From Asterias rubens (Eukaryota), in assembly GCF_902459465.1 (NCBI RefSeq), contig NC_047075.1, positions 10,912,001 through 10,976,000 on the forward strand: 64,000 nucleotides of DNA, given 5' to 3'. A program made the position numbers and the translations under genes. This document shows positions 8,910 to 51,473 of the stretch, piece by piece. Positions within the stretch are counted from its first letter, which is position 1. Every line of letters begins with the position of its first letter. The notes under the pieces are model-generated. The model was not told the origin of the DNA. It was given only the letters and a program-made list of their open reading frames with translations, and did no database searches.

Positions 8910-9429
8910 TTAAACCATTTCAGCTCCCTTGTGGTGAGAACGCAGCCTGTGCAACATGCGTTACTCGGCTGAATCAATCACAAGAACCATCTCTGCCCTC
9001 ACAGGTACCCATTTACTCCTGGGTGGAGAGAATTAGTTATAGTTAAGTGTCACGCACGGGCTTCGAACCCACACTCTGCTGAACAGAAGCACCAGAGATT
9101 GAGTTCGGTGCTCTTATCCGCTCGGCCATGACACCCTCGACGCCTGACCTGTCAGATTTTATACTATCTGGTCACATGTATCAATGAACATAACATAGAC
9201 CGGGTGGTGTTTTTGGCTTGCGGTAACACCTTGCTGGGTAGATAATGTTCCTTGATATAGTGTATTGCTGTAAATTCTTCTTCGTTTTGGTGTTACCGCA
9301 AACCAATTTGTTACCTCACCGTGCTTTGCCTCAAATCACAAAATATAATCTTATGGACGCACCGGCTGAATTGGGCTGTTTGGGCTACAATAGACTTCGA
9401 TGTGATTTCAAATGTCTTCAAGGAATTTA

Positions 9430-14242: not shown

Positions 14243-14674
14243 GTTACTTGCATGTGTGTGCGTCCGAAAGATAAGAGGCTAGAAAAGAAGTACATGTACA
14301 TGTACACGGTCGGTCGGAAGCGCGCCTGCACGTTGTAGTGCTATTTCTCACCTGTTGGCCAATTTTGTGCAAAACTCCACAACATATTGGGTGTTGCTTG
14401 ATTTTTCTACCCAACGAAATGGTACTTGAAAGAATTCCATTAATAGTTGGGCATTGATTACCCAACGACAGGTTACTACAACACTGTTATTTTTCAAATT
14501 TACCCAACAACAAAAAGTGCCCATTAGTTAAATAAAAAGGGACCAACAAATGTACAAATTCATTTGCCCAGTAGTTTTTTTTTTAATTTGCCCATTAGTT
14601 AAACAAAAAAAAACCCAACATATGCACAAATTAATTTGCCCAATATTTTTTTACCCAGCATTTTTTACAGTGTA

Positions 14675-17304: not shown

Positions 17305-17605
17305 ATACTACCAGCGCGAGCGGCGTAAGCCGCGAAGCGCCTTTAGCAACTCGTTTTAGAGCTTTATGTTTTTCTTTACCTTTGCCACGATTTTGGTGGG
17401 AGGACATGTATCGAATTTGCATCGAACGTTCTTGTGACGTCATGCAACTAATTGTGGCTTCAAATTGGCCAGCAACTCACCACGCTAATGCCTTATGCAT
17501 TACATTTTCTCCCTCAAAAATCGTTGGCAAATGTAAAGAAAAACAAAAGGCCCCAAAACGAGTTGCTAAAAGCGCTTCGCGGCTTACGCCGCTCGCACTG
17601 ATATA
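17305..17605. repeat. Inverted-repeat (MITE-like) element in the shared intron
   Basis: GCGAGCGGCGTAAGCCGCGAAGCGC..GCAACTCGTTTT arm mirrored at 17545-17600; central TGACGTCA; also present at 62935-63225. Confidence 0.7.
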
Positions 17606-17928
17606 TATATTTTGTTCAATCGTGCTAAAGTCTAGGTTTCTAGTAAAACTAGGACATTTCATGTGTCGCGCTCTAAACCAATGCAAATGTAGATTTTTTG
17701 TGAAGGGTGCAATTAGAAAACTAAATCTTTTCCATGTAAACAGTTATTTAGCTGGCGTTCTTTGGGTATAATGTTTGCCCCAAACTGTTCGGGCTTTCCC
17801 AATATGTGTAGTAAATGTAAACTGAGGAGAGTGTTTATTTTTTAGGGACATCGAGATAAGGGAAGAGGGGGACATGATTTGCATAAAGACGATCTAATAT
17901 TGTTTTGACTTTGTTCTTTTAATTTCAG

Positions 17929-17988
17929 GAGTGTATCCGGAAATCTTATTTCGAATTCATTTAAAGTACCACCGTCTCTCAGGTCTCT
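17929..17988 (+). CDS. Gene A LRR exon (SVSGNLISNSFKVPPSLRSL)
   Basis: tttcag|G..CT|gtaagt, 60 nt, phase 2/2; paralog at 63678-63737. Confidence 0.85.
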
Positions 17989-20900
17989 GTAAGTTGAATA
18001 CGTTTTTGTCTCATTTTGGGATTAAAGCTCATTATTTCACTAGACCAGTTGCTCGTTGACTCGATGCCTGTTTTGTTGTAGTATTTCATCGAACGCGTGG
18101 AGTATATAATCCACTATCCTATACCGTGCGGTTAAAAAAAACTGTCATCTTTTGGTGATATATCTTTAGAAGTACTGTACGGTTGGAAAATGTACACAGT
18201 GTTAAAATTAGTGAACCAAATCCATTGTTATGATATTTCCAATAGAAATGTTATTTCAATAAGAATGTTATTGGGAGAGCAGTACGACAATTCTAAATAA
18301 ATGGCTAATTAGCCAGCCGAAAGAGGTTAGTTGCACAATCGCTTAAAGCCATTGGACACTTTCTGAACAGAACAACAATTCAAATTTCACAGATTTACAA
18401 ATAACTTACAGGGTTTACAGAAGGTAATGGTGAAAGACTTCCCTCGAAATATTATTCCATGAAATGCTTGACTTTTTGAGAAAACCTTAAAACAATTATC
18501 AATTCTCGATTATGAGAATAATGGAATTATTTTAAACCATGTCATGACACTGCGTAACGTGCGGAAACAAGGGTTGGTTTTCCCGTTATTTTCTCCCGAC
18601 TCCGATTACCGATTGAGCCTAACCTTTCACAGGTTTGTTATTTTATATATAAGTTGTGATACACGAAGTGTGGGCCTTTGGACAATACTGTTTACCGATG
18701 TTGTGCGATTGCTTTAATGGTTTTTTTTGGGGGATCGAAACTATAATGTTAGAGGCTGCAACGAAAACACTTATGTTTTGGACCTTTAGGTCACACTGCC
18801 ATGGATTTGTATCAAGCGAGGCATTCTAGAAACAATGGTCCTGTCAGATGTCCACTTCTTTCAAGAGAGTTGGCCAATCCATAAATTATCTAAAGACCCA
18901 CTTACAAACATTGTTCATTTTCATTCCAGTGACGATTTCTTAAAAACAATTATAATACATTTATAACCAAAATGGTAAATTTCGAGTGATAAAACACTCT
19001 ATAAGATTTGACATACAGACAAGCGATTTAATTTTCGGGTTGCAACATCGTTTTGATTTTGTTTTTTTCTTCAAAGGTCGGCTTATGATAACCAGTTGCA
19101 AGATATAAGAATGATGATGGAAACCGGAAAACTATGGAAAGTGTAAGTACCTATCTACTTTTTGTTTGCCAAACTAATCATGATGTTGAAATGATTGACC
19201 AGTTCACCTGGTGCAATATAATGGTGAACGGTTGTGTTCATCATTAAGCCACGCCCATTTCATGTGCCCCCTAACATTACCCATACATTGCGTACGTAAA
19301 GAGCTCATGCACCACGCTTACATGTCCAGGTCACATGCACGTTGTCAACAACCAATGGAAGCTATCTTCTGATGATCTGCTTCACTCGTCCCCAGCGCCT
19401 TGCTTAAACCAAAGGCGCTGGGATGGGCAAACGTATCATGCACTGTCATTGGTTTAATAATGCGCAGTCCCATCATGCATCACACTCACACTGCGCCACA
19501 TTTCTATGCACTGTAATGTACGCATGACGTACTTCCTGAACAAGAATCTGTGCAAGCGATTAGCCCATCCCAGCGGTCCTGGATAGACTGGCCGCTGGGG
19601 CCGAGCGAAATTATCTGCCTGTTTGCCTGAACGATTCAATGAGGGCGCCGTTTTAGTTTGAGATTGTCAAAAATACATTTTCGCGAATATCCATTGCGCA
19701 AGCGTTAACTGTTAAATTGGCTGCATGCTGGTCTAGCTGGCGATCAAACTTGATTGCTAGGTAGACCAGCATGCACCTCATTCACGCCTAATGCACGCGT
19801 TCCAAGTATCTGTGTAAGGTCTATGGACATCCTTAAACTCGTTCTATTCGTTCTAACTCACAAAAAACAACTTTCGTTCATCGATCTCCAGCTTTTGCCT
19901 CAAGAAGGGCGTTGATAGAGAGTGTGACGTCATATAAAGGGGTATTTGGCACATCTGAATAATAGCCGAGTGTTTAAGCATCGATTTAAAGTTTAGCTGG
20001 TTAAGTCATCGGAGTGTGTTTGTTAGAATCCCTGTCGTGACACTTGTGTCCTTGAGCAATGCATTTTACCATGATTGCTTCCCTTCACCCAGGGGTATAA
20101 ATGGAGACCCGCGAGGGTAAAGGTTGATATTGTACTTGAGAAGGCCCCTGGAGCGTTACTGTTGCCCAAGTTGAATACTCCCCAGGGAGCTGTAAAGCGC
20201 AATGAGAAGGTTATTGTGTAATGCGCTATAATAGATGTTAAATTTGCATCGGGGAAAAAGAATATGCATGTTACTCGGGTGGGATTCGAGCCCACGACCC
20301 TTGCAATTCTAGAGCAGTGTCTTACCAACTAGACTACCGAGATTGCCCGGCAGCTAGAGGCAGTTCGAATCCTATGTTTTGGCAGCGGGTACCGCAACGA
20401 TATAATAGATTTTAAATTGGCATCGGGGATAAAGAATATTAATTTTGGTTTTTACCCATACACCGATGTGTTAGCACTGTATACTCAGTACCTTCCCGAG
20501 TCCTCTGAAAACAGGTACCCGCTGCCAAAACATAGGATTCGAACTGCCTCTAGCTGCCGGGCAATCTCGGTAGTCTAGTTGGTAAGACACTGCTCTAGAA
20601 TTGCAAGGGTCGTGGGTTCGAATCCCACCCGAGTAACATGCCTGTGATATTTTTTTTTACAGGACTCAGGAAAATACTGAGTATACAGTGCTAACACACA
20701 ACGGTGTATGGGTAAAAACCAAAATTAGTATACAAATTTGTTATTGTTTTGTTATTTTAAGCGAACATCTAATATATCCATCGTTTGCCTCGGGGGGGGG
20801 GGGGTGGGGGGTTGGCTGATAGAGAGTGTGACGTCATATGTAGGGATAATTGACAGTTTTTAAACCTGATAAGCGAACAAATGGGCCTCCATCAGCAGAC

Positions 20901-22381
20901 ACGTTGACATGTCATATGTCCGACGCAGTAACCATTTTGTTCCACTTTTCCCCCAGATCTTTCGCAAGAAACAAGTTGGAAGTAATTCGAACGGATACAT
21001 TTAGAAACTGCAACGAACTAGCTAAAGTGTAAGAACTATTAGTTTTAATGTTTTGAATGTAAAATTCATTTATCTCTTGTATTAAACTGTCTGTTTGTGA
21101 AGTTTATATTTAAGTTCATATTAACGCTGCTTCGACCAGCCAGTGCAGTTTCCGTGCAGTGTCACTTTTATAGTAACGTAATGTTTGCGGTACAAGTTAT
21201 AAAGATTCAGTGTCTTAGTTGTTAAAGACACTGGACACTATTGGTAAGTGTCAAAGACCAGTCTTCTCACTTGGTGTATCTCAAAAAAAAATTTTGAAAT
21301 AACAAACCTGTGAAAACTTGAGCTCAATTGGTCGTCGAAATTGCGAGATAATAATGAAAGAAAAACACCCTGGTCACATGAAGTTGTGTGCTTTTAGATG
21401 CTTGATTTCGTGACCTCAAATGCTGAATCTGAGGTCTCGAAATCAATTTCGTGGAAAATTACTTCTTTTTCGAAAACTACGTCACTTCAGAGGGAGCCGT
21501 TTCTCACAATGTGATATACTATTAACCTCTCCCAATTTATCGTTACCAAGTGAGGTTTTATGCTATCATTATTTGGAGTAAATAATACATGATCTTTGCT
21601 CTGTACAATGTTTAGTCATGGTGCCATTTATGAGTAACTGAAAACACCAGTGAATCGTTTCACCTTATACTAATGACAGAAGTGCGTAAAGAAAAAAAAA
21701 AATAAAGAAAATTAAATGAAATAAAAACAATGGTTACTGCGTCATAGACATTTGACACCCCTTAACAGTTTTAACTATGTTGTTTGTATTCTAAGGGGGC
21801 TTTCTGCAAACAAGATTTCTCAAATCGAGCCCGGTGGTCTTAGTGTGTCTAATTCTACCGAAATGTAAGTCCAAAATGTAAATATTAAAGATGCATACTT
21901 AAAATATTTGTGGGTGTGGCAGCCCCGCCAAAAATTACTGTCGAAGGTTAGAATATTTTCTGTCTAGTGACCACACTATCCGATATTTATTAAGTTAAAA
22001 ACAATTGTGCATAATGTGTAAGTCTTACTGACTTATATAAACCATGAATGTCAACACACAATGCCCACTAACTCACTGTCAGTAAGCCGACTATCACCAA
22101 CTATCACAAGGCCGATGTTTATAAATTACCTTTATATCTTCCGCTAGACGAAACCAGCCACATCTCGTTTTAAATAAAATAATATGGAATGAATTGGCTC
22201 TTCGATAATACCACATTGGATGATTGGCTTTAAATAGTCGTTATTTGGACGTATATGATCATTGACCAAGTTAAAGATACACATAAATTGAAAATATTAA
22301 AGTCTTTGAACAAAATCATTAACACTGATTTGTATCAGTGGTTGATAATGTTCCCTGTGGCCATTGGGGGAACCCCCACCC

Positions 22382-22416
<35 letters not shown>

Positions 22417-25400
22417 GTAAAAAAACATCAAAAAATACAAACAAAAATACAAACAAACACGAATTTCAATTGTTTCATAATAAAATGCTAATACAGTAAA
22501 ATAATTGTGTTTATTAAACAAGTAACAGTACACCAACTCAGAGTAAACATGACTGTAAGACAAGGCAGAGTAGTGGACAACTAACATCTTTTGTTTGTAA
22601 TTTTAGTCAAATTTTAAACATTGTTTAACTTAAGAGGGTTAACATTATTATTATTATTTGTTCTTTTATGCAAGTCGACAGACACACAAGGCCAGAAGGC
22701 CTCTTCAAGGTGTGAGCTATATACCCTAAGTTTCTCAAATTGTGTGTACCTTTAACTTAGTCAATGGTCCTATAAGTCCAAATAACGAATGTTTTGTATG
22801 ATTCAAGTTTGACACGTTTTATTTGTTCTTCCTTTGGCAGATGGCTGAACGACAACCCAGGTGTAGAGCTTAGTCCCGCCGCGTTTGGTGGTAGACGTTT
22901 TAAATCGATGTAATGCAATACAACACCTTGATTTAATTAGGGAATAACAGTGTTCGTACCCTATCATCACGGCGTGGTAATGACCGGGTTGGTGGCTGGC
23001 GCTGTTAACGGACCTCGCCTCCGGCTCGGTCCGTTAACAGCTCCAGCCACCAACCCGGTCATTACCACGCCGTGAAGACCGGGTACGAACACTGTTATTC
23101 CTAATAATAAATAATAAATACCTTTTTTAGCGAATTAAACGGCTACAATTGTCAAAATCTTGTGATTTTTCTCTCGGCGGTACTTCCAGACATGTTCAGG
23201 GGCCATAGTTGAGCTTTTGATGGTTCCAATCTCTTTCGTGCGTTAATCACATTACTGATCTTTGAGACCAGTGACTCTTTGAAACAATGATCTGTTAAGC
23301 GGCTTCACCGGGGTCAAATGAGGCAAATGATTGGACGATAGCTGTTCCTTGTGCATTAAAATGCCCATGAGCTCGGCGTCAGTTTATACGCGCGCAAAAC
23401 CATTACACGCGCGCACTCCAAATTTATACATTTCCAGCGCGCGTAAGCGTAAGTGCGCGAAGTTGCAGAGAAACTTGCAGGGATATAAATAAGCGTGCGA
23501 TATACAGTGCAACGCGCAAGGTTTACACAATGTATGCTGATTCAGTGGCCATTTATTCGCTATTTTCCAAAGCCGGTCTTTATACCACCGTTAACACTCC
23601 CACACGTGACCGGGTTTTGACCAAACAGAGACTTGAAACCGTCCAAGGTATTTATTAATAATAAATAAAAGTACAACGACAAGTTTGTCCCGTCAAGTAT
23701 GAAGCCTGTTTAGAATAAAATAAATGTCTTTAAAAGCTTCCGAGGTAAGAAATTCAGATTTTACTCATAATTTCGTTTAGAGACAAAACATGTTATGTTT
23801 TTAAACTCGTTCGCGTAAGATTTTGCATTATATAACACCGGCAAGACATTTATTTTAATTAAAAAAAAAAAAAAAAAGCTTTCATTGTTCTAATTTGGTT
23901 TATGCTCCACATTTATAGTTAAATAAAAATTGCATAAATTCAAAAAGATGTTTAACATTCAATAACAATATTGGTCATCTGTGAGGCAAACAATCTGCCG
24001 TGATGTACCACCAATGGGCCGAAGATAACAAATGGGCAAATGGATTGTTGAATGGCGTTAGTATTACACTGGCAGTGCAATGAAATTCAAGTTGCTAAAA
24101 CACACGCACTCACTTAAGGAACAAATCCCCATGCCAAGCTCCGGACTTGGATTTTAATCAGGGTCAACAGAGGAGAAATGCATGACATAAACAGCTGAGT
24201 AAACTTGAAGCCCATTGATTGAAAAGTCACTGTGTTGGTCTCATTTGTATTAGCAATGTATTGATGTAAATCTTAACATTTCTTCCAGATCACTCCAGGG
24301 CAATCATCTTACAAGTATAGAGAGCTACACACTGGGAGGCATGCTGCTGACTGTGTGAGTGGTTTGGGACAATGTTGAAGTTAAGAGAGTAAATGAATGG
24401 TTAGATAGTCCCCAGTTTTATTGTTTATTCTTGTTTATCGGGTGGTTGTTTCTGGCATATCCAAAATGGGACAAGAGTTTCAACCCAGAATTGACCTAAT
24501 TTGCATATTTAAATTAGGCGGTAATTATCAAACTTTATGGTAAATTATCTTTAAAACTATTCATTATCAGGACAAACTTTGTGTTAGAGGTGAATATAAA
24601 CCTGACCTCGGGAGTCTAAAAAAGATATTTGTCTACTCGAATGACTCTTTCCGAACAACTAGGTCAAAGATCAGGGGGTAAAACATACGTTTAATTGGTT
24701 TTCTCCACTTAAATGTATCATTACATGGTATACCATTACAGATAAATTAACAATGAATTAATTATTTGTCCCAATTGACCTCTATTGATGACATTCAATA
24801 AAATAAACTAAATTAATAATCAAATTTATCCGAAGGAATCTTGGTGCCAATGCCTTCTAGTGATTTTCCAAGCGAGTAGGTGTAAATTTTAACTAACAAA
24901 ATTGTCATTGCACAAACACCATGCTATCATTATGCCTAGTTTTCATTAGTCCTCTGGTGCGGGATTGATGTGCATTTTCTGCAATTATACCCCGTATGAG
25001 TGATACGTTGAACCATCAACTGTCCATGTGTACAAGGCAAAATTGAAGAACAGACGTTTGACACACTATATGGATGCAATGCCTGATGATGATATGTCTT
25101 AAAAATAGTGATTCTTTTCAACCGAATTGTCGTTTTCTAGGTACTCAAGAATGATTGCTGTCTTGGCCATACAATAATTTAGCTTATTACGTTTTTGTAG
25201 CTACTCGGCTTTTCTGTGCATAATAAGGCATCGTCAGCAGCAACCTTGTCCGCTGTGCATCGTCCAACCCGTCTATGTGATTTACCACGATGCTCTCGAC
25301 ATTAAGATCAGTTGCCTCCCCTGTTGGTGCCTCACCCGTTGGTGTCACTCTCAAGTTGTTGCCCAACAGTTGTATCCACCCCCGGTTGCATCAACGCTGT

Positions 25401-28400: not shown

Positions 28401-29121
28401 TACGCAATCTTACCGTGACCACGCGTCTTGTTGCATGGCGAAACGTGACATATACAGTGTTTTGTCAACAGAGGGCGATTGAATGTAAACACAGGTCACA
28501 TCGTCTATACTTACCTCAACATTTTGCGCTGACGATCACCATCTCCGTTTTACTGTGCAAGCGCTGGTTTTCTTCGCTAGATGTGAAAGGCGTGAGATAT
28601 TTTCTTCCATGGTAAAACAAAACTACCCCGGTGTCTTACAACCAGGGCCCAATTCTATAAAGCTTAACGGTAAGCAGATTCGCTTGCTTAACATAGCGAA
28701 ACAAATTGCTTAAGCGTGAACCTGTTTCACGAGCGGTTGCTAGCTTATGCACGTAAGCAAACTGCGCGCGGAACACTTAAGATCGTTTGCTTCAGCAAAA
28801 AAAAAAAAAGGTGCCGACATAATGGCGGGCGAAATAAATGCTGAGGCGATAACAAAATCATCACATTCTCTGTGTGATATGTATTGTTTGTAATGGTTAA
28901 AAGTGCCCCTTGAAAGGTTTACACACTAACTTAAGAGTAAACAAGAAGGAGATACATTGTAAACAAATTCTGAAACATTTTAGACACTCGTTTACTTCGA
29001 TTCACCTACCGCACACACTTGCAAAATACACACAGCTGCGCCGCCACACTATTGCAACAACGTATTGCAATTATATTGCACAATGCGCTGTGCTAAAACA
29101 GGGTGTTTAGCTAAAAAAAAG

Positions 29122-29155
<34 letters not shown>

Positions 29156-44100: not shown

Positions 44101-47100
44101 GAAGGCCCTGTCACACAATGGCGTATCGCATGAACGTAAGCCAACGTATGCGAAATATCGAAAATACGTTGGTGTACGCTAATATAAGTTTTGGGTAAGT
44201 TCGGGAAACGTCGTTTACGATAAGAGCACGTTTGGATACGCTGTTAAAATTGTGAACACATCGAGCCCGCGAATGTTTTTTACGCAAGTTCAAAATTTCT
44301 CTGCGTACTGAACGTGTGCTTCATTTGTTCTGCATAAGTTCCACGTAAAGTCATGGTACGTTAGACATACGTTGACATACGCTGGCATACATTATAGGAA
44401 CGTAACTTGTAGGTCGGTATGCGTTGATATACGTCTGCAAACGGAGAAACGTACAGCCAACTTAGTGATAACGTATCCATATCGTTTTGAACGTATAGAT
44501 AGCATTAAGTGCTCAACTTCGAGATAATGAAGCTGACACGCAAAGTTTCTTTGCAAAATCGTGATCAGAAAAGTGCTCTCGAACCCTTTGAGAATTCACG
44601 AGAAAATGCGAGTGTTCATTAGTGCGTCAGTAAACCGCTCCGTTTGGTGGGAAATGTTTCAACGAAAAAAACTTACAATGAAGGAGGATTATCTTGAGAT
44701 ATTTTATCTTAATGAAGAGTTATCAAATGTGTTCAACTGTATGCACATTTTAAATAAAACCTTCGCAAATTGTGACACGATTAAAAAGGTACGCTTTCAA
44801 TCCTGAGTCAAGTTACGCTTATGTTCCATACACAGCTACGTTTACGTTCCAAGATACCCAGCTACGCTTACGTTCCAAGATATGCGTACGTTCTAAAAGA
44901 TAAGTTCACTTTCTAAGCTACACAGTTACCCAGCTACGTTTGCATTCCAAGTTTTGCTAACATTCCTTCAAGTTACGCTATAATAACAAAAGGTACGCTT
45001 TGAAAGATATGGTTCCGTTTCAGGCTACGCAGCTACGCTCATACAATCCAATATACGTATAGGTTCCAGTTACGCTATAATCAATAGGTACGCTTTCAAT
45101 CAGAGTCAAGCTAGGGTTGCGTTTCAAGAGTTGCAGCTACGCTTACGATTCAAAGAAGATATGGTTCCGTTTCAGGCTACGCAGCTACGCTCATACAATC
45201 CAATATACGTGTAGGTTCCAGTTACGCTATAATCAATAGGTACGCTTTCAATCAGAGTCAAACTAGGGTTGCGTTTCAAGAGTTGCAGCTACGCTTACGT
45301 TTCAAAGTACATTCTCACAAGGACGCTTTTGAATCTCTCAATATTCCCCCCCCCCCGAGATAAAAAAAATATTTTACCGTGAATAACAGGGCCCATTGAT
45401 CAATTTCCTCTGTTTAGCAGAAAATACTGCTTACAAAATGTCTTTACTTTTTAAATGTTTAGTCGGGCACCAGCCCCGGTTTTCAAATTTAATTACAATT
45501 TGACTGGTAATCAGTTTCTGCTATGTAATACCTTTTTTTGTGCTAAGCAAATTGTTGTGCCACTATGAAGGCATTATGAAATTGTGCCCTGGCACGTCGG
45601 GAGTACGTTACGCCACGAGCGCATTCCGATCTGCATCATGGCTATGCGGTAGTAGGCCTAGTTTATTGGTGACAGGAATGCTTTATTTACTTGTCATTGT
45701 CCCATCATATTCTGGGTTAGTTTCTTTCTGTTCTTCGTGACGATCTTTGGCTGTACGTCGAAGCACGAAGGCCTACCTCCATCGTCGAAGGATCTGCCTG
45801 ATCCGTATATTTATGCTGGTTGTTTATAATACATGGATAGACTGGAACCTTATGCTGCGTCGTAGTAAACACGTTGCTATAAACAAAGCACCATTCTACT
45901 TACAACATTATGCGACAATGTCACGAAGATTTGACAGTTGCAACGGCTGGAAACACGTATACGGTGACCTTTAACCGCTTTGTTTTTTTTTAATAATATT
46001 TCGCTAATTACGTGATATTTTACGGGGCGTACAGTTTCAGTTCGTCATAATACCCTTTCAAATTAGTTTACACTATAAACAGCAGATTTGTATTTTATTA
46101 ATGTTTTCCCATTATCAATATATGACCATGCTTTAAAACACATAATAGTATCAAGTAATACTGGTAGCCCACCTTCATGCCCTAAGCGATAACTGCACTG
46201 CGTGTGTTTGTTCAAATTGATTTTAATCATAATTACCAAAGATTACTTGCAATTATTTTTAAAAAAGACTGAACTGTACACCAAAACTATATAAACATTA
46301 TTTGTATTATTTTAACATTGCATATGTGAATAACTTAGTATGCATAGGTTAACCAAATTGATGTAATTAAATTACCTTGTACACTCGAAATTTGATTTCA
46401 GTCCGTAACCTAAGAATATCATTTCGTTCCTCTGGTTTATTTTCAGTTAAACTAATTTTCTTTTTAGATCTGTTGATAACAGTCTTCAAGAAGCACCACA
46501 AACGAATCGGACAGACATTACAATGTAAGTACCCGAATGGAAAATATGAGAAAACTAAAAACAGAAAAAAAAATAATATTTAAAGGCAAATGTCATCATT
46601 GATTTCTTCTATCGAAGTAACTGTTCGTCCCCTCTTTAAAATCTGTAATGTCGTTCAATAACATGTACATTCACATGTTACTTTCGCAGTGAATTAGTCG
46701 GAGACGACTTTATACGTCCATTCGACATGCTGTATGTAGGAAACCGTGGCTTTTCGTCATCGGGTTTTGTGTGCCAAGAAACTTCACAAACCGAGCGTAA
46801 ATGCAGGCCCTGTCATCAGGGAACTTTCGGATCGCAGTCAGGCTGTAGCCCATGTCCGCCAGGTGAGTTTGCAGGAAATGTACTACTTTTAAGGTGCTCC
46901 CATACAGAAAGGGATATACTATTTATTTAAAATGTTAACAGACACTTTTTCCCCTCGAAATACTATTGCATTCCGTCGAAAAATTAATTCGTTTCTTGTT
47001 TTCGTTTCCTTGAAACGATGCTACGTTTCCTCAAAATCATTTCGTTTTCTAAAGATATTTGTTTCTTCCCTAAAAATGTTTGTTTGTTCCCTCAAACATA

Positions 47101-47260
47101 TTAGGCAGCCCAGGAGGCCTTGATATGTCATTTAATTTACCATATCATTACCATATCGCCGCACAATTGGAACATCCTTTAGTTTGTGTGTTGTTTATAA
47201 GTATATATATTTTTTTTTAAATGTTGCCGTTGTTTTCTTATATAACAACAAATACAAATA

Positions 47261-47299
<39 letters not shown>

Positions 47300-50200
47300 G
47301 GGGAATTCAGGTCTTTTAACTATAAATGAAATTCAAGTTTCATCATGATCAATAAGAGTGAACAGAGACGGATTCATAATGGAATTCTTATTGAGCCTTA
47401 AATCCATTTGAAACTTTAGGTAAACATTATTGTACAAAGGCCCACACTTCGTGTGTAACAACTTACAGTTTATATAAAATAACAAACCTGTGAAAATGTA
47501 GGCTCAATCAGTCATCGGAGTCGGGAGAAAATAACGGTAAAACTAACCCTTGTTTCCGCAAAACCGTAAATCTCGATATCGAGAATTGATATTGTTTGAA
47601 TGTTTTATCAAAAAGAAGAGCATTTCATGGAAAAGTAATTCAAGGTTTGAAGGTAACGATAGAAGAAAGCCTCCCTTAAAATATTTCTTGCTGAGGTGCT
47701 TTGTTTTTTTAGAAATGATTTCAGCAATGGCACAAAATTGAGTTTCGTTTTAGAAGGTTTGTGCCATAACGTCAACTCGCGGGACGTACGAAATCCTAAA
47801 ATGAACGTATGGTAACGTTCGGGCAATGTAACCTGAATGTTGATTGATCACCCGATTTTCTTACACCATACCTTACTGATTACATAAATGTAAAGCCATA
47901 CACATATTGTTTTTTGGGGATGATTTAATCTCCGGTACAACCGAGGTGCGCGGGCTGAAGGACTACAATCCCGGCCATATGTAAACCAACATTTTCCTCA
48001 AAGTGGATTCGTTAAGACAGGTTGTCGTAACTACCACATCTATATATTCCACAGGTGGGTTTTACCAGAGCAAAACTGGTCAGTATTCGAATGACGGTTT
48101 GATCTGTGAAGTATGAAAATATTCACTTAATACAGGGAAGGTACACGATTGCTAGTTACTCAAAACAAATAATAACTTAAAAACTTACTTGGTAACGAGC
48201 ACTGGAGAGCTGTTGATAGTATAAAACAGTGTGGGAAATGACTCCCTCTGAAGTAATTTAGTTTTTGAGAAAGAGGTAATTTCTCACTAAAATAATAACA
48301 AACTTCCAGCTAGAAGTATTTTATTATTATCTGAAAGCACACAAATTCGTCCAACAAGGGTGCTTTTTTCCTTCATCTTTTCTTTGCAACTTCGATGACC
48401 AATTTAAGTCTAAATTTTCACAGGATTGTTTTTTTATGGTTATGATGGGATACACCAAGTGAGACGACTGGTCTTTGACAATTACCAAAGTGTACCTTCC
48501 CTTTAACAATCGCAAATTTTGGTAAATTCACCACGAGTTTCAAGTGTACATATTCGCAAGAATATTCGCCAAAGTGGGAGAGCAGCATCAGTAATGTTCT
48601 AATGGCACATCTGTTTACTCCACAGGTGGGTTTTACCAAAGCAAAACTGGTCAGTATTCGAATGGCGATTTGAACTGTGAAACATGCAATAAAGGAACTT
48701 ACGTCTCGCCTGAAGCTTCACCTGGCACGAGAGCTGCTGATTGCAAGGTGTGTCCAACAGGGACAGATAAAAGTACCGCTGCAGGGTTCCGGGCTTGTCC
48801 GTGTGTGGACAACTATTACCGCACTGATCGGTTTGGCGAATGTCATCAGTGTCCCCACGAAGGGATCGACTGCTCCGGGGAATATCAACATCTTCGTCCG
48901 GGCTACTGGTGGACGTGGAACTGGAGCTCACAAGAAGACCAAATCTCGCAGGAAAACCACGATTCCTATATGAATTTTGTCAGCAATATAGGCATTATGA
49001 ACGACTCGTATGACAGAAGCACGCAGAGATTTAGCGGGAAGTTACCAAAGGTACACAAATGTCCACGCGACGACGTGTGTCCAAATGGTGGATTTGGTAT
49101 CGACTCAACTTGCAGTGAAGGTTACAAGGGCTGGCTGTGTTCTGAATGTGCAAACAAGTATTACTCTTGGCTTGGTCATTGTTTGGAATGTCCAGAGTGG
49201 CCGTTATTTGCTGTAGAAGTTTTCTGCATCTTGCTTGTTGTCTGCCTCATAGTCTGTTTCTTTGTGTGGGATGCATATAGAAGGCATCGTCGGAATGAAC
49301 GAAATATCGTGAGCGTCTTCTTAGCACGCGGGAAAATCGTAGTTGGTTTTTGCCAGGTCATGGGGGAAATATTCTCTGCTCTAGATGACATTCCTTGGCC
49401 AAAGAATTTGCAGACATTGGGCTCAGTCTTTAAGACAGTGGAGGTCAGCTTAGTTGGCTGGTTGATTAGTCCTCGATGCTTTATTCCGGATTTCACCTAC
49501 CACAATATTTACATTGAATTCTTGGTCGGTTTCAGCTTCATCATATTTGTTGTTCTGGTTGCTTTTTGTTACTATGTATTCAGAAAATATTACATAAGAG
49601 ACGCGCAAGGGTTGCCTGCGCACTGCAAAAATGATCTCAGTAAAAGTAAACGAAGATGTTTCCTTATTGTCGTCATTTTGCTCTTTCTGTCGTACCCAAG
49701 CGTATGCAGCGTTGTTATTACTCTGTTGCCGACTGGGTGTAAGCTGTTTTACATGGATGAGGATAAAGAACTCAACATCACCTTGCTGAGGTATGATTAC
49801 GCAATAGACTGTGAGAGCCCAGAACACAATGTTTACAACTATGCCGCCCAAACAGCTGTGGTGTACGTTGTGGGTTTCCCGCTCGGATTGTTCATTCTTC
49901 TGTGGTATAGTAAAAGAAAGACCACCAATGGAGAAGATCAAGCATCCGTTTCGAGTCAGGGTTCAGATCAAGTGTTGCCCGGTACCTCCAATGATGGGAT
50001 AGAGGATACAGAAACACCCGTGTCGAGTCAAAATTCGGGTCAAGTACTGCTTGTTGTCACCCATGATAAGACAGATGACTTTAATAACCTTGTCACAGAG
50101 TCAGGTGCGCACGTATTTCATGACACCTCAGAGCCAGATGCGAAAATTAGCTGGCAGAGTTTTCTGTGTGAAAACTACAAAGCCGAGTTCTGGTACTGGG

Positions 50201-50998
50201 AGATCATTGAACTTACCCGTAAGATCCTGCAGACGCTCTTCATACTGCTGTTCGGACCCGAGGACCACTTCACACTCTTCATGTCTGTCTTCTTGTCTGT
50301 CTTCTTTCTGCTCATCCACGCCTACCTGAAACCAATGAAGGATGCAGCTGAACAGCGGCTTCAGATGTGCTCGCTTGGTATCATCTTCATAAACATGCTG
50401 GCGGCGTCCTTGCTCCTCATGCCAAATGACGATGGGCCAATTGTAGATGATAGAAAGGGAACTCTTTCAACTGCGTTAGTTCTTCTTAATCTCAGCATTA
50501 TTGTTTTCGTTGCAAGTAAGTAAACAATTGGGTTTATCACAACTGCAGCTTTAATTTATTTCTGAAGCATATGTGTTGTTTTCTTGCATGAATGCCAAAT
50601 ACAAAACACACAAACAAACCGGTGACATAACAGAAATCTTGCCATTAAATAGATGTTGCAAGATGTGAGTTTGGTTCGCACACGAACCTCATATCGGTAA
50701 CAACCAGATATATCGGTTTTATTTAATACTAGCATGTTGCTCCATCCCACACTACACTCGCATGTTACAATGCCAATCCAAAAAAATCCATAAATAACTC
50801 ACACACATTTTGAAACGGCGTCATCAACATTTTACGATGTAAGGAGTGTGTGTGTACCCATAAGTTAGTTTGACGATAACATGAAAAGAAAGTGATCAAA
50901 AGGCGCTATGATATAGATTACAAGATCACTTATAATTGGCTACACGAGTCGCCAATTGATGAACATGATCTCTTGTCACTCCGATTTCACACTCGGTC

Positions 50999-51031
<33 letters not shown>

Positions 51032-51473
51032 AATACGTCCGTTTATGAGCCCCATTTTGACCAATAGAACTTCCTAAAGTCGCACACGCACACCCCGAAA
51101 CTTTGATTCTACAGAGAGTATATTGGCAAAAGAGGGAATGGCTTGTTGGGGGGGGGGGGGTGGCGCTGTGTACATAAACAAACTCAAAAAATATATGTAA
51201 AGGTTGTTTTTAAATTGTTCTACTATTGCACCATTCGTATGTTCTTGTATTTTAGTAAGCTCCGTCTGGACTGGCATCAAGACTCTTTCGAGACATGGAT
51301 GCTTTGCTTGTATAAGAAATTCATCGGTGCAGATGTATAGATGGTGCCGAAGACGCTACAAGAGAGAGCAAGATGGCTATCTGGACGACCAACACTTTTC
51401 ACTTTTTGACGAACAGGACGAGCAGACCAATGAAGGCCAAGACGCTTCATCAGTGGTTCCAGTAACTAATTAA
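17929..51473 (+). CDS. Gene A: LRR + TNFR/Eph-like Cys-rich + multipass membrane receptor; join(17929-17988,19077-19142,20957-21028,22841-22909,24289-24354,29725-29808,31744-31815,33118-33195,38429-38572,42403-42471,43048-43122,43357-43428,46468-46524,46690-46862,48626-50515,51256-51473), 5' exon not found
   Basis: All 16 exons have AG/GT boundaries and join into one open frame (3265 nt, ~1087 aa). LxxN-x-L LRR motifs; CxxCPxG repeats; CSEGYKGWLCSEC juxtamembrane motif; ~8-9 hydrophobic segments. Confidence 0.85.
18343..18717 (-). mobile_element. TTAA MITE, second subfamily
   Basis: TTAA AGCCATTGGAC ... GTGCGATTGCT TTAA; shares the TTTCACAGGTTTGTTATTTT core with the main family; partial inverted copy at ~47398-47670. 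Confidence 0.7.
19077..19142 (+). CDS. Gene A LRR exon (SAYDNQLQDIRMMMETGKLWKV)
   Basis: ttcaaag|..GT|gtaagt, 66 nt, phase 2/2. Confidence 0.75.
19963..20240 (+). mobile_element. tRNA-derived SINE (Nin/Deu-like)
   Basis: GCCGAGTG..AAG A-box, GTGACACTTGTGTCCTTGAGCAA, CACCCAGGGGTATAAATGG core, GCGCTATAA tail; homologous to 3219-3522. Confidence 0.75.
20266..20641. repeat. 128-bp inverted repeat pair each carrying a tRNA-like (AGA anticodon position) sequence
   Basis: 20266-20393 is a near-perfect reverse complement of 20514-20641. Cloverleaf-like 20564-20635 with intact D and T arms but weak acceptor and anticodon stems. Confidence 0.8.
20957..21028 (+). CDS. Gene A LRR exon (SFARNKLEVIRTDTFRNCNELAKV)
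   Basis: ccccag|..GT|gtaaga, 72 nt, canonical 24-aa LRR. Confidence 0.9.
21222..21580 (+). mobile_element. Kolobok-like MITE, right end lost
   Basis: TTAA AGACACTGGACAC start; body matches 868-1254. Confidence 0.8.
22841..22909 (+). CDS. Gene A LRR exon (WLNDNPGVELSPAAFGGRRFKSI)
   Basis: ttggcag|..AT|gtaatg, 69 nt. Confidence 0.8.
22937..23104. repeat. Near-perfect 168-bp palindromic MITE
   Basis: TTAGGGAATAACAGTGTTCGTACCC..GTTAACGGACC loop GGTCCGTTAAC..GGGTACGAACACTGTTATTCCTAA. Confidence 0.9.
24289..24354 (+). CDS. Gene A LRR exon (SLQGNHLTSIESYTLGGMLLTV)
   Basis: ttccag|..GT|gtgagt, 66 nt. Confidence 0.85.
25380..26140. repeat. 15-bp minisatellite (GTTGTTGCCTCCCCA)n with a higher-order ~90-bp repeat
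   Basis: Dozens of degenerate units; CTATCTTCCCCAGATGTTGTCTTCCTTG recurs at ~25737, ~25828 and ~25980. Confidence 0.9.
26295..27170. repeat. ~27-28-bp minisatellite (AGAAGCTATCGCTCCCAGAAGCTACCAG)n
   Basis: About 30 degenerate units directly visible. Confidence 0.9.
28646..29298. mobile_element. MITE with GGCCCAATTTCATA(G/A)AGC-type TIR (Harbinger-like)
   Basis: GGCCCAATTCTATAAAGC / GCTCTATGAAATTGGGC; internal GCTTAAGCA repeats. Confidence 0.55.
29725..29808 (+). CDS. Gene A LRR exon (RLPNNNLQELPDGLFSDQTDSERHVQRI)
   Basis: ttgtag|..AT|gtgagt, 84 nt. Confidence 0.85.
31744..31815 (+). CDS. Gene A LRR exon (DLANNQIRKVSPSTFKGLKEGMYL)
   Basis: ttacag|..TT|gtaagt, 72 nt, canonical LRR. Confidence 0.9.
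31862..32000 (+). mobile_element. Truncated tRNA-derived SINE of a second family
   Basis: GCGCTCGCCTCTCACCAAGGTGACCCCGGTTCGATACTCGGC head followed by ATGTGAGTTGAGTTGTG..GGTTCTC..GAGGGTTTTCC body. Confidence 0.5.
32290..32635 (+). mobile_element. Penelope-like terminal fragment
   Basis: CCTGACGATGACTACAGCAAGCTATAGTCGAAACG resembles the PLE pseudo-LTR signature; related GTTACCGCAAAC segment at 9200-9330. No ORF. Confidence 0.3.
33118..33195 (+). CDS. Gene A LRR exon (LLAANKLNDESLPNDLLVNFTLNTLI)
   Basis: tttcag|..AT|gtaagt, 78 nt. Confidence 0.85.
33790..35006. mobile_element. Helentron/HINE-like non-autonomous element: two ~330-bp internal tandem units plus 5 terminal hairpin units
   Basis: Units at 34043 and 34373 (AAGCTCAAAAGTTG..GAAGGCGAACTTTGACCC); TGTTCGGC-TGTTG-GCCGAACA hairpin repeated 5 times at 34750-35006. 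Confidence 0.5.
35435..38103 (+). mobile_element. Decayed RTE-clade LINE (APE endonuclease + reverse transcriptase)
   Basis: YAPT..GDLNA..LDHMLT (EN); GPDGIP, YRPITLLSVPGK, DIKAAFDSVDR, GVRQ.CVLAPALF, YGSETW (RT); frameshifts and stops; (TGA)n tail at 38090-38103. Confidence 0.9.
38429..38572 (+). CDS. Gene A double-LRR exon (DLSMNELTKFP..LYLQRNHITALDETMFKGLHSLASL)
   Basis: atacag|..CT|gtaagt, 144 nt = two 24-aa LRRs. Confidence 0.9.
38815..42170 (-). mobile_element. Decayed L2/CR1-group LINE
   Basis: RT ORF 40273-39248 (LDLSAAFDTVDH, VPQGSVLGP, YADDIQLY, SRLDNGNALL); EN remnant VIVYRP..TGDFNIHVD; upstream YY..TF.L...GDI.*SPGP motif; AT microsatellite near the 3' end. Confidence 0.9.
42403..42471 (+). 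CDS. Gene A LRR exon (YIYQNPIIQMADFQFFETTLEFL)
   Basis: ttgcag|..CT|gtaagt, 69 nt. Confidence 0.85.
43048..43122 (+). CDS. Gene A LRR exon (LMFQCDLSEVGMRPFATKGDTIKQI)
   Basis: ttgtag|..AT|gtgagt, 75 nt; Cys at the LRR Asn position. Confidence 0.8.
43357..43428 (+). CDS. Gene A LRR exon (LLHGNPIEHISDTVWRDLRHDCYV)
   Basis: gattag|..GT|gtaagt, 72 nt. Confidence 0.85.
43822..46020. mobile_element. Composite repeat: two GGCCCTGTCACAC termini (Harbinger-like) plus an inverted copy of 6130-7620
   Basis: GGCCCTGTCACAC at ~43830 and ~44104; GCTACGCTTACGTT arrays; 45290-46020 is the reverse complement of 6135-6900. Confidence 0.55.
46468..46524 (+). CDS. Gene A short LRR-like exon (SVDNSLQEAPQTNRTDITI)
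   Basis: ttttag|..AT|gtaagt, 57 nt. Confidence 0.75.
46690..46862 (+). CDS. Gene A linker + first Cys-rich repeat exon (..CRPCHQGTFGSQSGCSPCPPG)
   Basis: tcgcag|..G|gtgagt, 173 nt, phase 2/1. Confidence 0.9.
48055..48116 (+). pseudogene. Duplicated acceptor + first 20 codons of the large exon, ending in TGA
   Basis: ccacag|GT GGG TTT TAC CAG AGC AAA ACT GGT CAG TAT TCG AAT..GAA GTA TGA vs 48626 copy ..GAA ACA TGC; 7 differences in 62 nt. Confidence 0.85.
48131..48506 (-). mobile_element. Kolobok-like MITE between the two acceptor copies
   Basis: TIR AGGGAAGGTACAC / GTGTACCTTCCCT TTAA; body homologous to the main MITE family. Confidence 0.8.
48626..50515 (+). CDS. Gene A large exon: Cys-rich repeats + multipass TM domain
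   Basis: ccacag|GTGGG..GCAA|gtaagt, 1890 nt uninterrupted ORF (track 48670-50523); ENYKAEFWYWEIIELTRK motif. Confidence 0.95.
51256..51473 (+). CDS. Gene A terminal exon (ISSVWTG..CRRRYKREQDGYLDD..VPVTN*)
   Basis: ttttag|TA completes the phase-1 codon; basic then acidic cytoplasmic tail; in frame with track ORF 51204-51473. Confidence 0.8.

What the first reader, a model, noticed from the sequence alone, without database searches (positions are those of the whole stretch)
17929..51473. Tandemly duplicated LRR + Cys-rich + non-canonical multipass membrane receptor family
Seen: a ~1.15-kaa protein built from LRRNT, ~14 LRRs, several CxxC-P-x-G repeats, a C..GY.G.LC..C..YY motif and ~8-9 hydrophobic helices, with KIVVGFCQV and ENYKAEFWYWEIIELTRK motifs and no DRY or NPxxY. 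Knowledge: LGR/RXFP and TLR receptors do not have this membrane domain; from recall, the Y-K-x-x-W-x-W-E-x-x-x-L-x-R-K helix is typical of the poorly characterised GPCR-like/TRP_C-like proteins of protists, oomycetes and fungi. Inference: an expanded, uncharacterised invertebrate receptor system, plausibly for pattern recognition or sensing, whose signalling route is unknown.
Basis: partly seen in the sequence, partly recalled or inferred. Interest (0 to 1): 0.75.

Follow-up and report, generated by a model that had tools for sequence, protein, structure and literature searches.

The report
Starfish LRR receptor with nine-pass membrane core
This starfish locus holds one copy (missing its first exon) and the start of a second copy of an uncharacterised animal receptor family. 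The family joins a fast-evolving leucine-rich-repeat binding domain to a nine-helix membrane domain otherwise studied only in amoebae (SadA), malaria/Toxoplasma parasites (CRMPs) and yeasts (Flc/Pkd2).

Summary
The window is Asterias rubens LR699105.1:10,912,001-10,976,000. An 18-exon chain (16802-51473, all AG/GT, 1134 open codons) encodes about 15 LRRs (mostly one per exon), four CxxCxxG cysteine modules, a DUF7630 motif and nine membrane helices. The quoted motifs are present; DRY and NPxxY are absent.

- This copy lacks exon 1 (ATG, signal peptide, LRRNT). Homology to paralogous units stops abruptly at 16125.
- RefSeq splits the copy into a 167-aa and a 927-aa model, neither with a signal peptide.
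- The interval holds only one membrane exon. The tandem copy starts at 59060, with an intact exon 1, and runs off the window.

The membrane domain is neither a GPCR nor a canonical TRP channel, and no solved structure matches it. Predicted-structure searches tie it to Dictyostelium DDB_G0281931 and SadA, Plasmodium CRMP2 and fungal Pkd2/Flc (Pfam PF06011, borderline by sequence).

The family has at least 7 loci on this chromosome. It also occurs in other echinoderms, in anthozoans and probably in sponges.

Variation among paralogs concentrates on the predicted LRR binding face (dN/dS above 1 there, about 0.4 in the membrane part). This supports a diversifying ligand sensor.

Signalling is inferred, not shown, and transcription of this copy is unproven.

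The parts
15135..15160 (+). RefSeq first coding exon of the 167-aa model P0245 (MPPKPAMNS, donor GTAAGA). It is not homologous to exon 1 of the paralogs and encodes no signal peptide.
16125..18252 (+). Block duplicated at 61738-64000 (93-94% nucleotide identity, introns included). Position 16125 is the abrupt 5' limit of homology between gene A and the paralogous units.
16802..16873 (+). Gene A exon 2 (LRR), phase 1.
17929..17988 (+). Gene A exon 3 (LRR)
19077..19142 (+). Gene A exon 4 (LRR)
20957..21028 (+). Gene A exon 5 (LRR)
21796..21864 (+). Gene A exon 6 (LRR)
22841..22909 (+). Gene A exon 7 (LRR)
24289..24354 (+). Gene A exon 8 (LRR). The RefSeq model P0245 reads through its donor to the TGA at 24356-24358.
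29725..29808 (+). Gene A exon 9 (LRR). It is in neither RefSeq CDS of this locus but is used in the paralog.
31744..31815 (+). Gene A exon 10 (LRR). The RefSeq 927-aa CDS starts at the internal ATG at 31808.
33118..33195 (+). Gene A exon 11 (LRR)
38429..38572 (+). Gene A exon 12 (two LRRs)
42403..42471 (+). Gene A exon 13 (LRR)
43048..43122 (+). Gene A exon 14 (LRR)
43357..43428 (+). Gene A exon 15 (last LRR)
46468..46524 (+). Gene A exon 16 (cap/linker after the LRRs)
46690..46862 (+). Gene A exon 17 (linker plus the first cysteine-rich modules, CRPCHQG and CSPCPPG)
48626..50515 (+). Gene A exon 18, 1890 nt. It encodes further ephrin-receptor/TNFR-like cysteine modules, DUF7630 (49054-49191), membrane helices 1-8 and most of helix 9 (from 49204), a disordered cytosolic loop, KIVVGFCQV (49333-49359) and ENYKAEFWYWEIIELTRK (50170-50223).
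51256..51473 (+). Gene A last exon: end of helix 9, the cytosolic tail and the stop codon
48040..48113 (+). Pseudo-exon: an 89% identical copy of the acceptor and first ~58 nt of exon 18, separated from it by a repeat-element copy (48121-48514)
59060..59265 (+). Gene B exon 1: ATG, signal peptide, LRRNT (CEVCHC...C), donor GTAAGT
62422..62493 (+). Gene B exon 2 (LRR), 96% identical to gene A exon 2 with flanks
63678..63737 (+). Gene B exon 3 (LRR). The gene runs off the window.

Best explanation
Window 16.8-51.5 kb carries a young, 5'-truncated duplicate (gene A) of a clustered Asterias gene family, and the next copy (gene B) begins at 59,060.

Anatomy of intact members (for example LOC117299361, 1203 aa):
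- They are N-out, C-in surface proteins.
- The order of parts is signal peptide, LRRNT, about 15 LRRs (mostly one per phase-1 exon), a rigid stalk of ephrin-receptor/TNFR-like cysteine modules ending in DUF7630, then a nine-helix membrane core with a long disordered cytosolic loop and a short tail.
- The membrane core is homologous to that of Dictyostelium SadA and DDB_G0281931, apicomplexan CRMPs and fungal Flc/Pkd2 (PF06011). It is not a 7TM GPCR and not a 6TM TRP channel.

Shown here: the gene structure, the architecture, the fold relationships, the family expansion, the concentration of variation on the LRR concave face, and purifying selection on the stalk and membrane parts.

Inferred:
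- The LRR concave face binds diversifying extracellular ligands (microbial, environmental or self).
- Engagement is passed through the stalk to the nine-helix core.
- The core signals without G proteins. It may do so by calcium permeation, as reported for reconstituted S. pombe Pkd2. Alternatively it may act through partners of the cytosolic loop and tail, or through paralog dimers, as for SadA and CRMPs.
- Gene A itself has no leader exon, so it probably does not make a surface receptor. It may be a recent pseudogene or a source of truncated products.

The confidence of 0.7 covers the whole statement. Identity and architecture alone rate about 0.9, a sensor role about 0.6, and the output mechanism is open.
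For: Gene model:
- Searches give the exon chain.
- validates it against the paralog's RefSeq protein, and against XP_033639066.1 (100% identity).

Truncation:
- No exon 1 exists in window 1-16800.
- Collinearity with L001 and gene B ends at 16125.
- RefSeq splits the locus into P0245 (167 aa) and P0165 (927 aa).

Architecture:
- Pfam finds LRR_8, LRRNT, DUF7630 and TRP.
- The PDB profile matches the Ephrin_rec_like region of mastigoneme Mst1 at E 7e-14.
- Nine helices come from hydropathy plus AlphaFold models with pLDDT 83 and 82 and pTM 0.77 and 0.78.

Fold kinship:
- AFDB Swiss-Prot: Q54T82 at E 7e-14, SadA at 1.6e-5; pkd2, YOR365C, FLC1-3, C663.14c and C1322.03 all at probability 1.0.
- AFDB clusters: Stylophora LRR protein at 7e-39, Plasmodium CRM2 at about 5e-15.
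- ESM Atlas: TM-score 0.72-0.74 to cnidarian DUF7630/LRR clusters.

Not a GPCR or canonical TRP.

Family size: 2310 representatives at E<1e-3.

Selection:
- Variability at concave x positions is 0.49 against 0.25 for the rest of the repeat (p 2.5e-9).
- dN/dS at those positions is 1.3-8.1 in six pairs, against 0.4-0.5 in the cysteine-rich and membrane parts.
- For P0189 vs P0162 the counts are 30 nonsynonymous to 1 synonymous change (p 0.004 against neutrality).
- Stalk, membrane part and tail together lie below neutrality (P 6e-4).

Functional precedents: SadA (PMC2173991), CRMPs (PMC9670195 and PMC9815656), Pkd2 calcium permeability (PMC9727806).
Against: - No functional data exist for any animal member.
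- The Pfam PF06011 score of gene A is below the curated threshold (17.9-20.9 bits against 28.5). TM-scores to the fungal models are only 0.29-0.36.
- No pore, selectivity filter or partner-binding motif was identified.
- The selection signal rests on four coding sequences and Nei-Gojobori counts, not on a site-model test. Only one pair is clearly above neutrality.
- Four RNA runs gave essentially no depth on exons 2-5. Exons of 60-72 nt may escape that mapper.
- The word shares for the big exon in RNA runs (0.3-0.66) are what a 97.9% identical paralog would give (0.51). Expression of gene A itself is therefore unproven.
- An upstream leader exon beyond the window cannot be excluded.
Confidence: 0.7

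Rival explanations
1. Gene A is a dead or dying pseudogene. Loss of exon 1 and the promoter at the 16125 breakpoint silenced it. The two RefSeq models are fragments picked out by ORF finding, and the open 1134 codons only reflect the youth of the duplicate.
For: - The missing exon 1 and the abrupt end of homology.
- Essentially no RNA depth on exons 2-5 in four runs.
- RefSeq cannot build one model across the locus.
- Another local copy is also split, into 516-aa and 326-aa models.
- dS to the nearest paralog is only about 0.06, so few disabling hits are expected yet.
Against: - All 18 exons keep their frame and all keep AG/GT.
- The stalk, membrane part and tail show fewer nonsynonymous changes than neutrality (P 6e-4), although the intact partner lineage contributes to that result.
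- The LRR part of gene A is no more diverged than that of intact paralogs.
Confidence: 0.45
2. Gene A is a working full-length receptor that uses an unrecognised leader exon. The leader lies either more than 16.8 kb upstream, outside the window, or in a new sequence within window 1-16800.
For: - The chain is open and correctly spliced, and the membrane part is under constraint.
- RefSeq does place a spliced first exon at 15135-15160 with a good donor.
Against: - That exon encodes only 9 residues and no signal peptide.
- No LRRNT-like or exon-1-like sequence exists in the 16.8 kb upstream.
- Intron 1 is about 3 kb in gene B and in L001.
Confidence: 0.15
3. The family consists of adhesion molecules in the manner of SadA. 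The ectodomain sticks cells to substrate or particles, and the tail links to the actin cortex. There is no ion flux and no specific ligand sensing.
For: - The structural match to SadA (E 1.6e-5).
- The SadA knockout phenotype of lost substrate adhesion and reduced phagocytosis (PMC2173991).
Against: Rapid change concentrated on the LRR concave face, with dN/dS above 1, is more typical of specific and shifting ligands than of general adhesion. This does not exclude adhesion to variable partners.
Confidence: 0.2
4. It is an LGR-type leucine-rich-repeat GPCR, as some automatic names for the holothurian homologs suggest (LGR4/LGR5).
For: - The LRR ectodomain mostly has one repeat per exon, followed by a cysteine-rich hinge.
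- Holothuria homologs carry automatic LGR4/LGR5 names.
Against: - There are nine helices, not seven.
- There is no DRY or NPxxY.
- GPCR chains match the membrane model only at E>1, probability 0.13 or less and TM-score 0.2 or less.
- No 7tm Pfam family is hit.
Confidence: 0.02
5. It is a canonical TRP/polycystin cation channel (6TM protomer, tetrameric pore) fused to LRRs.
For: The Pfam name of PF06011, and the literature description of S. pombe Pkd2 as a polycystin homolog.
Against: - The PDB holds many TRP and polycystin structures. None is among the 50 best rows of either search with the membrane-only model: Foldseek found nothing at E 0.001 or better, and VIA-align gave Z 9.5 or less on short helical pieces.
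- The topology has nine helices.
Confidence: 0.03

Closest known systems
Dictyostelium discoideum DDB_G0281931 (Q54T82), putative leucine-rich repeat-containing protein
   Same: It has the same overall plan: LRRs outside, followed by the same multi-helix membrane core. It is the best Swiss-Prot structural match (Foldseek E 7e-14, probability 1.0, 657 aligned residues).
   Different: It is itself uncharacterised, shares only 16% identity over the match, and is amoebozoan. Whether the LRR fusion is inherited or convergent was not tested.
Dictyostelium SadA (Q8I7T3), substrate adhesion receptor
   Same: It has a signal peptide, a cysteine-rich (EGF-like) ectodomain next to the membrane, nine membrane helices and an N-out topology. 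The structural match has E 1.6e-5 and probability 1.0.
   Different: It has no LRRs. Its role in adhesion, phagocytosis and cytokinesis is shown genetically (PMC2173991). TM-scores are low (0.28-0.34).
Apicomplexan cysteine repeat modular proteins (PfCRMP2 Q8IBR8, PbCRM2 Q7RCD9, TgCRMPA/B)
   Same: They have ephrin-receptor-like/EGF-like modules directly before a nine-helix core, with the N terminus outside and the C terminus inside. Foldseek gives E about 5e-15 and TM-score about 0.5. They have been proposed to be contact sensors.
   Different: Their outer domains differ (Kringle, lectin, MAR). They act as a CRMPA/CRMPB heterodimer with MIC15 and TSP1 to trigger rhoptry exocytosis. They are far larger proteins.
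Fungal PF06011 'TRP-like' proteins (S. pombe Pkd2; S. cerevisiae Flc1-3, YOR365C)
   Same: The membrane core is shared. hmmscan gives E 1.5e-3 to 1.3e-9 across family members, and every fungal Swiss-Prot hit has Foldseek probability 1.0.
   Different: The fungal proteins carry a different N-terminal domain instead of LRRs and cysteine modules. Gene A scores below the curated Pfam threshold. Reconstituted Pkd2 is reported to pass calcium under membrane stretch (PMC9727806); nothing comparable is known for the starfish family.
Cnidarian LRR-DUF7630 proteins (for example Stylophora pistillata A0A2B4RD19, auto-named LRRC15; Nematostella LOC5521529)
   Same: They share the full architecture. The Stylophora protein is the best structural match overall (E 7e-39, TM-score 0.71 by query), and sequence hits reach about E 1e-187.
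   Different: Identity is only 23-34%. They are equally uncharacterised.
LGR / glycoprotein-hormone receptor GPCRs
   Same: They have an LRR ectodomain with roughly one repeat per phase-1 exon, a cysteine-rich hinge and then a multipass domain (exon structure of LGRs from general knowledge).
   Different: They have a 7TM rhodopsin fold with DRY and NPxxY. The starfish membrane domain has nine helices, lacks both motifs and shows no fold match.

Membership tests
Pfam PF06011 (TRP; fungal Flc/Pkd2 type) | HMM score at or above the gathering threshold (28.5 bits) | tested here: not met
   - Gene A scores 17.9-20.9 bits.
- The A. amurensis ortholog scores 26.5 bits and Acanthaster 28.0 bits.
- 13 of 60 family members match at E<1e-3, best 1.3e-9.
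- This indicates remote homology rather than curated membership.
Pfam PF06011 (TRP; fungal Flc/Pkd2 type) | Membrane core with the same fold as Flc/Pkd2 | tested here: inconclusive
   Foldseek probability is 1.0 for pkd2, YOR365C, FLC1-3, C663.14c and C1322.03. However, E is only 2e-4 to 5e-2 and TM-scores are 0.26-0.36, and both sides are predictions.
Pfam PF06011 (TRP; fungal Flc/Pkd2 type) | Calcium permeability or mechanosensitivity | not testable with these tools
   Only the literature precedent for S. pombe Pkd2 is available (PMC9727806).
SadA/CRMP-type cysteine-rich nine-helix receptors | Cysteine-rich EGF/ephrin-receptor-like modules immediately before the first membrane helix, facing outside | tested here: met
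   - There are 21 Cys in residues 373-622, with CxxCxxG modules and DUF7630 ending at helix 1.
- The PDB profile hits an Ephrin_rec_like protein (mastigoneme Mst1) at 7e-14.
- 25 of 60 members hit PF07699.
SadA/CRMP-type cysteine-rich nine-helix receptors | Nine membrane helices, N terminus out and C terminus in | tested here: met
   - Hydropathy gives 8 strong segments, and AlphaFold adds one amphipathic helix.
- The orientation is inferred from the signal peptide of the paralogs and from the NIT sequon and Cys pairs in the predicted outer loops. It was not measured.
SadA/CRMP-type cysteine-rich nine-helix receptors | Structural similarity of the core to SadA and CRMP models | tested here: met
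   SadA matches at E 1.6e-5. Plasmodium CRM2 (Q7RCD9, Q8IBR8) matches at E 4-5e-15 with TM-score 0.50-0.51 by query.
Pfam PF24633 (DUF7630) | HMM match to the 45-residue cysteine motif before helix 1 | tested here: inconclusive
   Gene A scores 23.5 bits against a threshold of 27, over the full model length (E 6e-5). 41 of 60 relatives match at E<1e-3, and Acanthaster is above threshold at 28.9 bits.
LGR / class A GPCR | Seven-helix rhodopsin fold with DRY and NPxxY | tested here: not met
   There are nine helices, both motifs are absent, GPCR fold matches have probability 0.13 or less, and there is no 7tm Pfam hit.
Canonical TRP/polycystin channels | Six-helix protomer with an S5-pore-S6 module | tested here: not met
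   No TRP or polycystin chain is among the 50 best rows for the membrane-only model in Foldseek PDB or in the VIA-align wide search.
Toll-like receptors | Single membrane helix followed by a TIR domain | tested here: not met
   There is no TIR hit and there are nine helices.

The most novel reading that the evidence does not exclude
These proteins may be ionotropic or otherwise G-protein-independent pattern or chemical sensors of non-vertebrate animals. An LRR domain under an arms-race-like regime would directly gate a nine-helix, calcium-permeable core. That core would be the animal counterpart of the amoebal SadA and apicomplexan CRMP contact sensors. It would be a receptor class apparently absent from the standard model animals and therefore overlooked.
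Probability: 0.15. Interest if true: 0.85.

Novelty: new variant of a known kind. Interest (0 to 1): 0.6.

Why it matters
- If intact members are surface sensors, echinoderms and cnidarians have a large LRR receptor class that is neither TLR, NLR nor GPCR. It evolves fast exactly where ligands should bind.
- It would also give the poorly understood SadA/CRMP/Flc-Pkd2 membrane core an animal branch that can be tested in tractable embryos (Patiria, Nematostella).
- That could clarify how apicomplexan CRMPs sense host contact.
- No solved structure resembles the core, so its mode of signalling is an open structural question.
- For genome annotation, automatic names such as LGR4/5, SLITRK2, LRRC15 or IGFALS for these genes are misleading.

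Tried and rejected
- Second membrane exon in the window: none found.
- Exon 1, LRRNT or signal peptide upstream of 16802: not found by tblastn with three full-length relatives, by a Cys-pattern scan, or by sensitive blastn of paralog exon 1 plus intron 1.
- RNA support for exons 2-5: depth lay almost only on intronic repeats.
- RNA-run word shares for the big exon were rejected as proof of expression. A 97.9% identical paralog predicts the same share.
- Sequence search of the PDB with the family profile: only the cysteine modules match.
- Four fold searches of the PDB, two on the whole model and two on the membrane-only model: no credible match to the membrane core.
- Paper searches for DUF7630, for 'TRP C-terminal domain' with 'leucine-rich repeat', and for SadA with CRMP: nothing relevant.
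- Earlier scan notes searched by words: nothing on this family.
- The long ORFs at 25277-26906 and 49450-49941(-) are repeat or antisense artefacts. The one tested, 25962-26906, has no Pfam hit.

Full report
**Where the window is**

The window is from the common starfish Asterias rubens. RefSeq protein XP_033639066.1 (P0165, LOC117299626, 927 aa) is 100% identical to my translation. Its locus places the window at LR699105.1:10,912,001-10,976,000 on the plus strand.

**Gene model**

The only long ORF in the interval is 48670-50523 (617 aa). I used the closest full-length relatives from an exhaustive HMMER search as guides. With them, tblastn and a splice-site search gave 18 plus-strand exons from 16802 to 51473.
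- Every junction is AG/GT.
- The chain is open for 1134 codons and ends at the TAA at 51471-51473.
- Thirteen of the first fourteen exons are 60-84 nt and encode one leucine-rich repeat each, in phase 1; the other (144 nt) encodes two.
- An 1890-nt exon encodes most of the cysteine-rich stalk and nearly all of the membrane domain.
- Mapping the same boundaries onto the paralogous locus L001 reproduces the RefSeq protein of LOC117299361 (P0189, residues 70-1203) exactly. This is independent validation of the model.

**What is missing, and the duplication**

The chain starts in phase 1 and has no start codon, signal peptide or LRRNT. None exists anywhere in window 1-16800.

The paralogous unit L001 is collinear with gene A at 90-95% nucleotide identity through introns. 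That homology, like the homology to the next copy in the window, stops abruptly at 16125. Exon 1 and most of intron 1 are absent upstream.

RefSeq accordingly splits the locus into two models:
- 'SLIT and NTRK-like protein 2' (P0245, 167 aa). It uses a non-homologous 26-nt first coding exon at 15135-15160, then my exons up to 24354, then reads through to a TGA.
- LOC117299626 (927 aa), starting at an internal ATG at 31808.
- Neither model has a signal peptide.

- Block 16125-18252 matches 61738-64000 at 93-94% (this agrees with the earlier scan note found).
- Gene B has an intact exon 1 at 59060-59265 (ATG, signal peptide, LRRNT, donor GTAAGT), plus exons 2 and 3 before the window ends.
- The interval itself holds only one membrane exon.

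**Transcription**

Three RNA-type runs (X1, X7, X3) hold 29-66% of the sampled words of the big exon. However, the paralog's big exon is 97.9% identical, which alone predicts a share of about 0.51. This therefore does not prove expression of gene A.

I laid those three runs plus one raw-read RNA run (X13) on 16500-21150. There was essentially no depth on exons 2-5 and very high depth on intronic repeats. Exons of 60-72 nt may escape the mapper, and contigs show presence rather than absence, so this is weak negative evidence. The status of gene A is unresolved. I lean towards a recent pseudogene or a producer of truncated products.

**Protein anatomy**

- four CxxCxxG modules;
- the C..GY.G.LC..C..YY motif (Pfam DUF7630, 49054-49191);
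- KIVVGFCQV and ENYKAEFWYWEIIELTRK;
- no DRY or NPxxY.

There are 14 complete LRRs plus part of the first, and 21 cysteines in the stalk.

Hydropathy gives eight strong segments. AlphaFold models built on a 96-sequence alignment add one amphipathic helix, giving nine membrane helices. The models are 738 residues (pLDDT 83, pTM 0.77) and a membrane-only 491 residues (pLDDT 82, pTM 0.78). They also show two short beta hairpins in an outer loop and a disordered loop of roughly 50-60 residues.

Given the signal peptide of intact paralogs, the topology is N-out, C-in. This is inferred, not measured.

**What the membrane domain is**

By sequence it touches Pfam PF06011 ('TRP', the fungal Flc/Pkd2 family) only weakly.
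- Gene A scores 17.9-20.9 bits against a threshold of 28.5.
- Relatives reach 28.0 bits.
- 13 of 60 members match at E<1e-3, best 1.3e-9.

No solved structure resembles it.
- The family profile and the whole model hit only cysteine-rich proteins: mastigoneme Mst1, TNF receptors, the EphA2 cysteine-rich domain and thyroglobulin.
- The membrane-only model has no Foldseek hit at E 0.001 or better (its best is about 0.5).
- GPCR chains appear at probability 0.13 or less.
- VIA-align gives at most Z 9.5, on short helical pieces, within the stated noise for helical proteins.
- No TRP or polycystin chain appears among the 50 best rows of either search.

Against predicted structures the picture is clear.
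- Swiss-Prot models: Dictyostelium DDB_G0281931, an LRR protein (E 7e-14); SadA (1.6e-5); and S. pombe pkd2, YOR365C, FLC1-3, C663.14c and C1322.03, each at probability 1.0.
- AlphaFold DB clusters: a Stylophora LRR protein (7e-39), a sea-cucumber DUF7630 protein, many protist 'ephrin receptor-like / TRP C-terminal' proteins with varied ectodomains, and Plasmodium CRM2 (about 5e-15).
- The ESM Atlas agrees.

Singer et al. had already noted that the nine-helix CRMP core resembles Dictyostelium models and that no homolog has been solved (PMC9815656).

**Family and distribution**

The exhaustive search found 2310 cluster representatives at E<1e-3 and 175 at E<1e-30.

Named animal members come from:
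- sea stars (Asterias rubens and amurensis, Patiria miniata with about 14 loci, Acanthaster planci with about 9);
- brittle stars, sea cucumbers and a crinoid;
- anthozoans (Nematostella, Actinia, Oculina, Stylophora).

The Atlas adds sponge-dominated clusters. Names given by the sources are either 'uncharacterized protein' or misleading automatic ones (LGR4/5, LRRC15, IGFALS, SLITRK2).

In A. rubens I placed seven loci over about 2.2 Mb of one chromosome. They include two tandem pairs and a second copy that is also split into two models. In A. amurensis two members sit in tandem about 76 kb apart.

**Evolutionary pattern**

Among intact paralogs the LRR part is always the most diverged structured region, for example 63% identity against 85-89% for the membrane part.

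Within the repeats, variation concentrates on the x positions of LxxLxLxxNxL, the predicted concave binding face.
- Mean pairwise difference there is 0.49, against 0.25 for the rest of the repeat and 0.20 for core positions (p 2.5e-9).
- The same holds when gene A is left out.

I used four coding sequences: gene A, LOC117299361 and two A. amurensis genes, the latter three validated against their proteins through the big exon.
- Nei-Gojobori dN/dS at the concave positions is 1.3-8.1 in all six pairs.
- It is 0.4-0.5 in the stalk and membrane parts.
- The clearest pair has 30 nonsynonymous to 1 synonymous change (p 0.004 against neutrality).
- Stalk, membrane part and tail together lie below neutrality (P 6e-4).

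This is suggestive of diversifying selection on ligand binding. It is not a formal site-model test.

**How it most likely works**

Shown: the architecture, the fold kinship, the expansion and the pattern of change.

Inferred:
- The LRR solenoid binds diverse extracellular ligands.
- The disulfide-rich stalk, which the model packs onto the outer loops, couples binding to the nine-helix core.
- The core signals without G proteins.

Three studied relatives give the options:
- Reconstituted S. pombe Pkd2 is reported to pass calcium under membrane stretch (PMC9727806).
- SadA is needed for substrate adhesion and phagocytosis, and its authors suggest it may link to the cytoskeleton through its intracellular domains (PMC2173991).
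- CRMPs act as dimers that sense host contact and trigger exocytosis (PMC9670195 and PMC9815656).

I rate a ligand or contact sensor role as likely (about 0.6). Calcium permeation as the output is possible (about 0.3). A pure adhesion role is a live rival.

**Novelty**

The genes are annotated and the domains are catalogued, so the sequence itself is not new. No paper in the searched library describes the animal LRR-bearing branch or DUF7630. The link of that branch to SadA, CRMPs and Flc/Pkd2, together with the concave-face signal, appears unreported.

I class it as a new variant of a known kind, of moderate to good interest. The interest is tempered because the copy inside the stated interval lacks its leader exon.

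Noticed in passing
window 20270-20343 (-) and 20564-20637 (+): An inverted pair of tRNA-like elements sits in a gene A intron (ARAGORN calls them tRNA-Ser, anticodon AGA; Rfam tRNA 44-48 bits). The surrounding bins 20244-20711 carry enormous RNA depth in all four runs. This suggests a tRNA-derived SINE family or active tRNA genes.
   Followed up: no
window 48040-48113 and 48121-48514: A pseudo-exon repeats the acceptor and first ~58 nt of the big exon (89% identity). A copy of a short repeat element separates it from the real exon. The same element occurs at least eight more times in the window. The arrangement is shared with the paralog L001.
   Followed up: partly
window 35561-38118 (+) and 39248-40273 (-): Retrotransposon-like ORFs lie in the 5.2-kb intron before the double-LRR exon and in the following intron. 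The RVT_1 reverse transcriptase ORF on the minus strand scores E 6e-27. A GC-rich (53%) plus-strand element there has ORFs without Pfam hits. All are shared with the paralog, so they predate the duplication.
   Followed up: partly
window 25420-26139 and 26297-27167: Two intronic minisatellites (15/91-nt and 28/253-nt units) create long artefactual ORFs, including one of 314 aa with no Pfam match.
   Followed up: yes
window 18216-18839 and 19308-20867: Intronic repeats have very high depth in RNA runs, many mismatches and loose ends. They look like members of abundant, transcribed repeat families rather than part of the gene.
   Followed up: no
L009 (LR699105.1:10,347,069-10,382,310): Another family copy is annotated as two adjacent genes: 516 aa with LRRs, and 326 aa with a PF06011 hit. 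This suggests a second broken member in the cluster.
   Followed up: no
L002, locus position about 37253 (window 59060): Gene B has an intact start, signal peptide and LRRNT, yet the gene table of the public assembly lists no gene there. It may be unannotated or marked as a pseudogene.
   Followed up: no
ESM Atlas clusters: Some haptophyte proteins with the same nine-helix core carry TIR_2 domains (13-18% of cluster members), and others carry START or RCC1 domains. The core seems to be a widely reused platform joined to varied domains, both outside and inside the cell.
   Followed up: no
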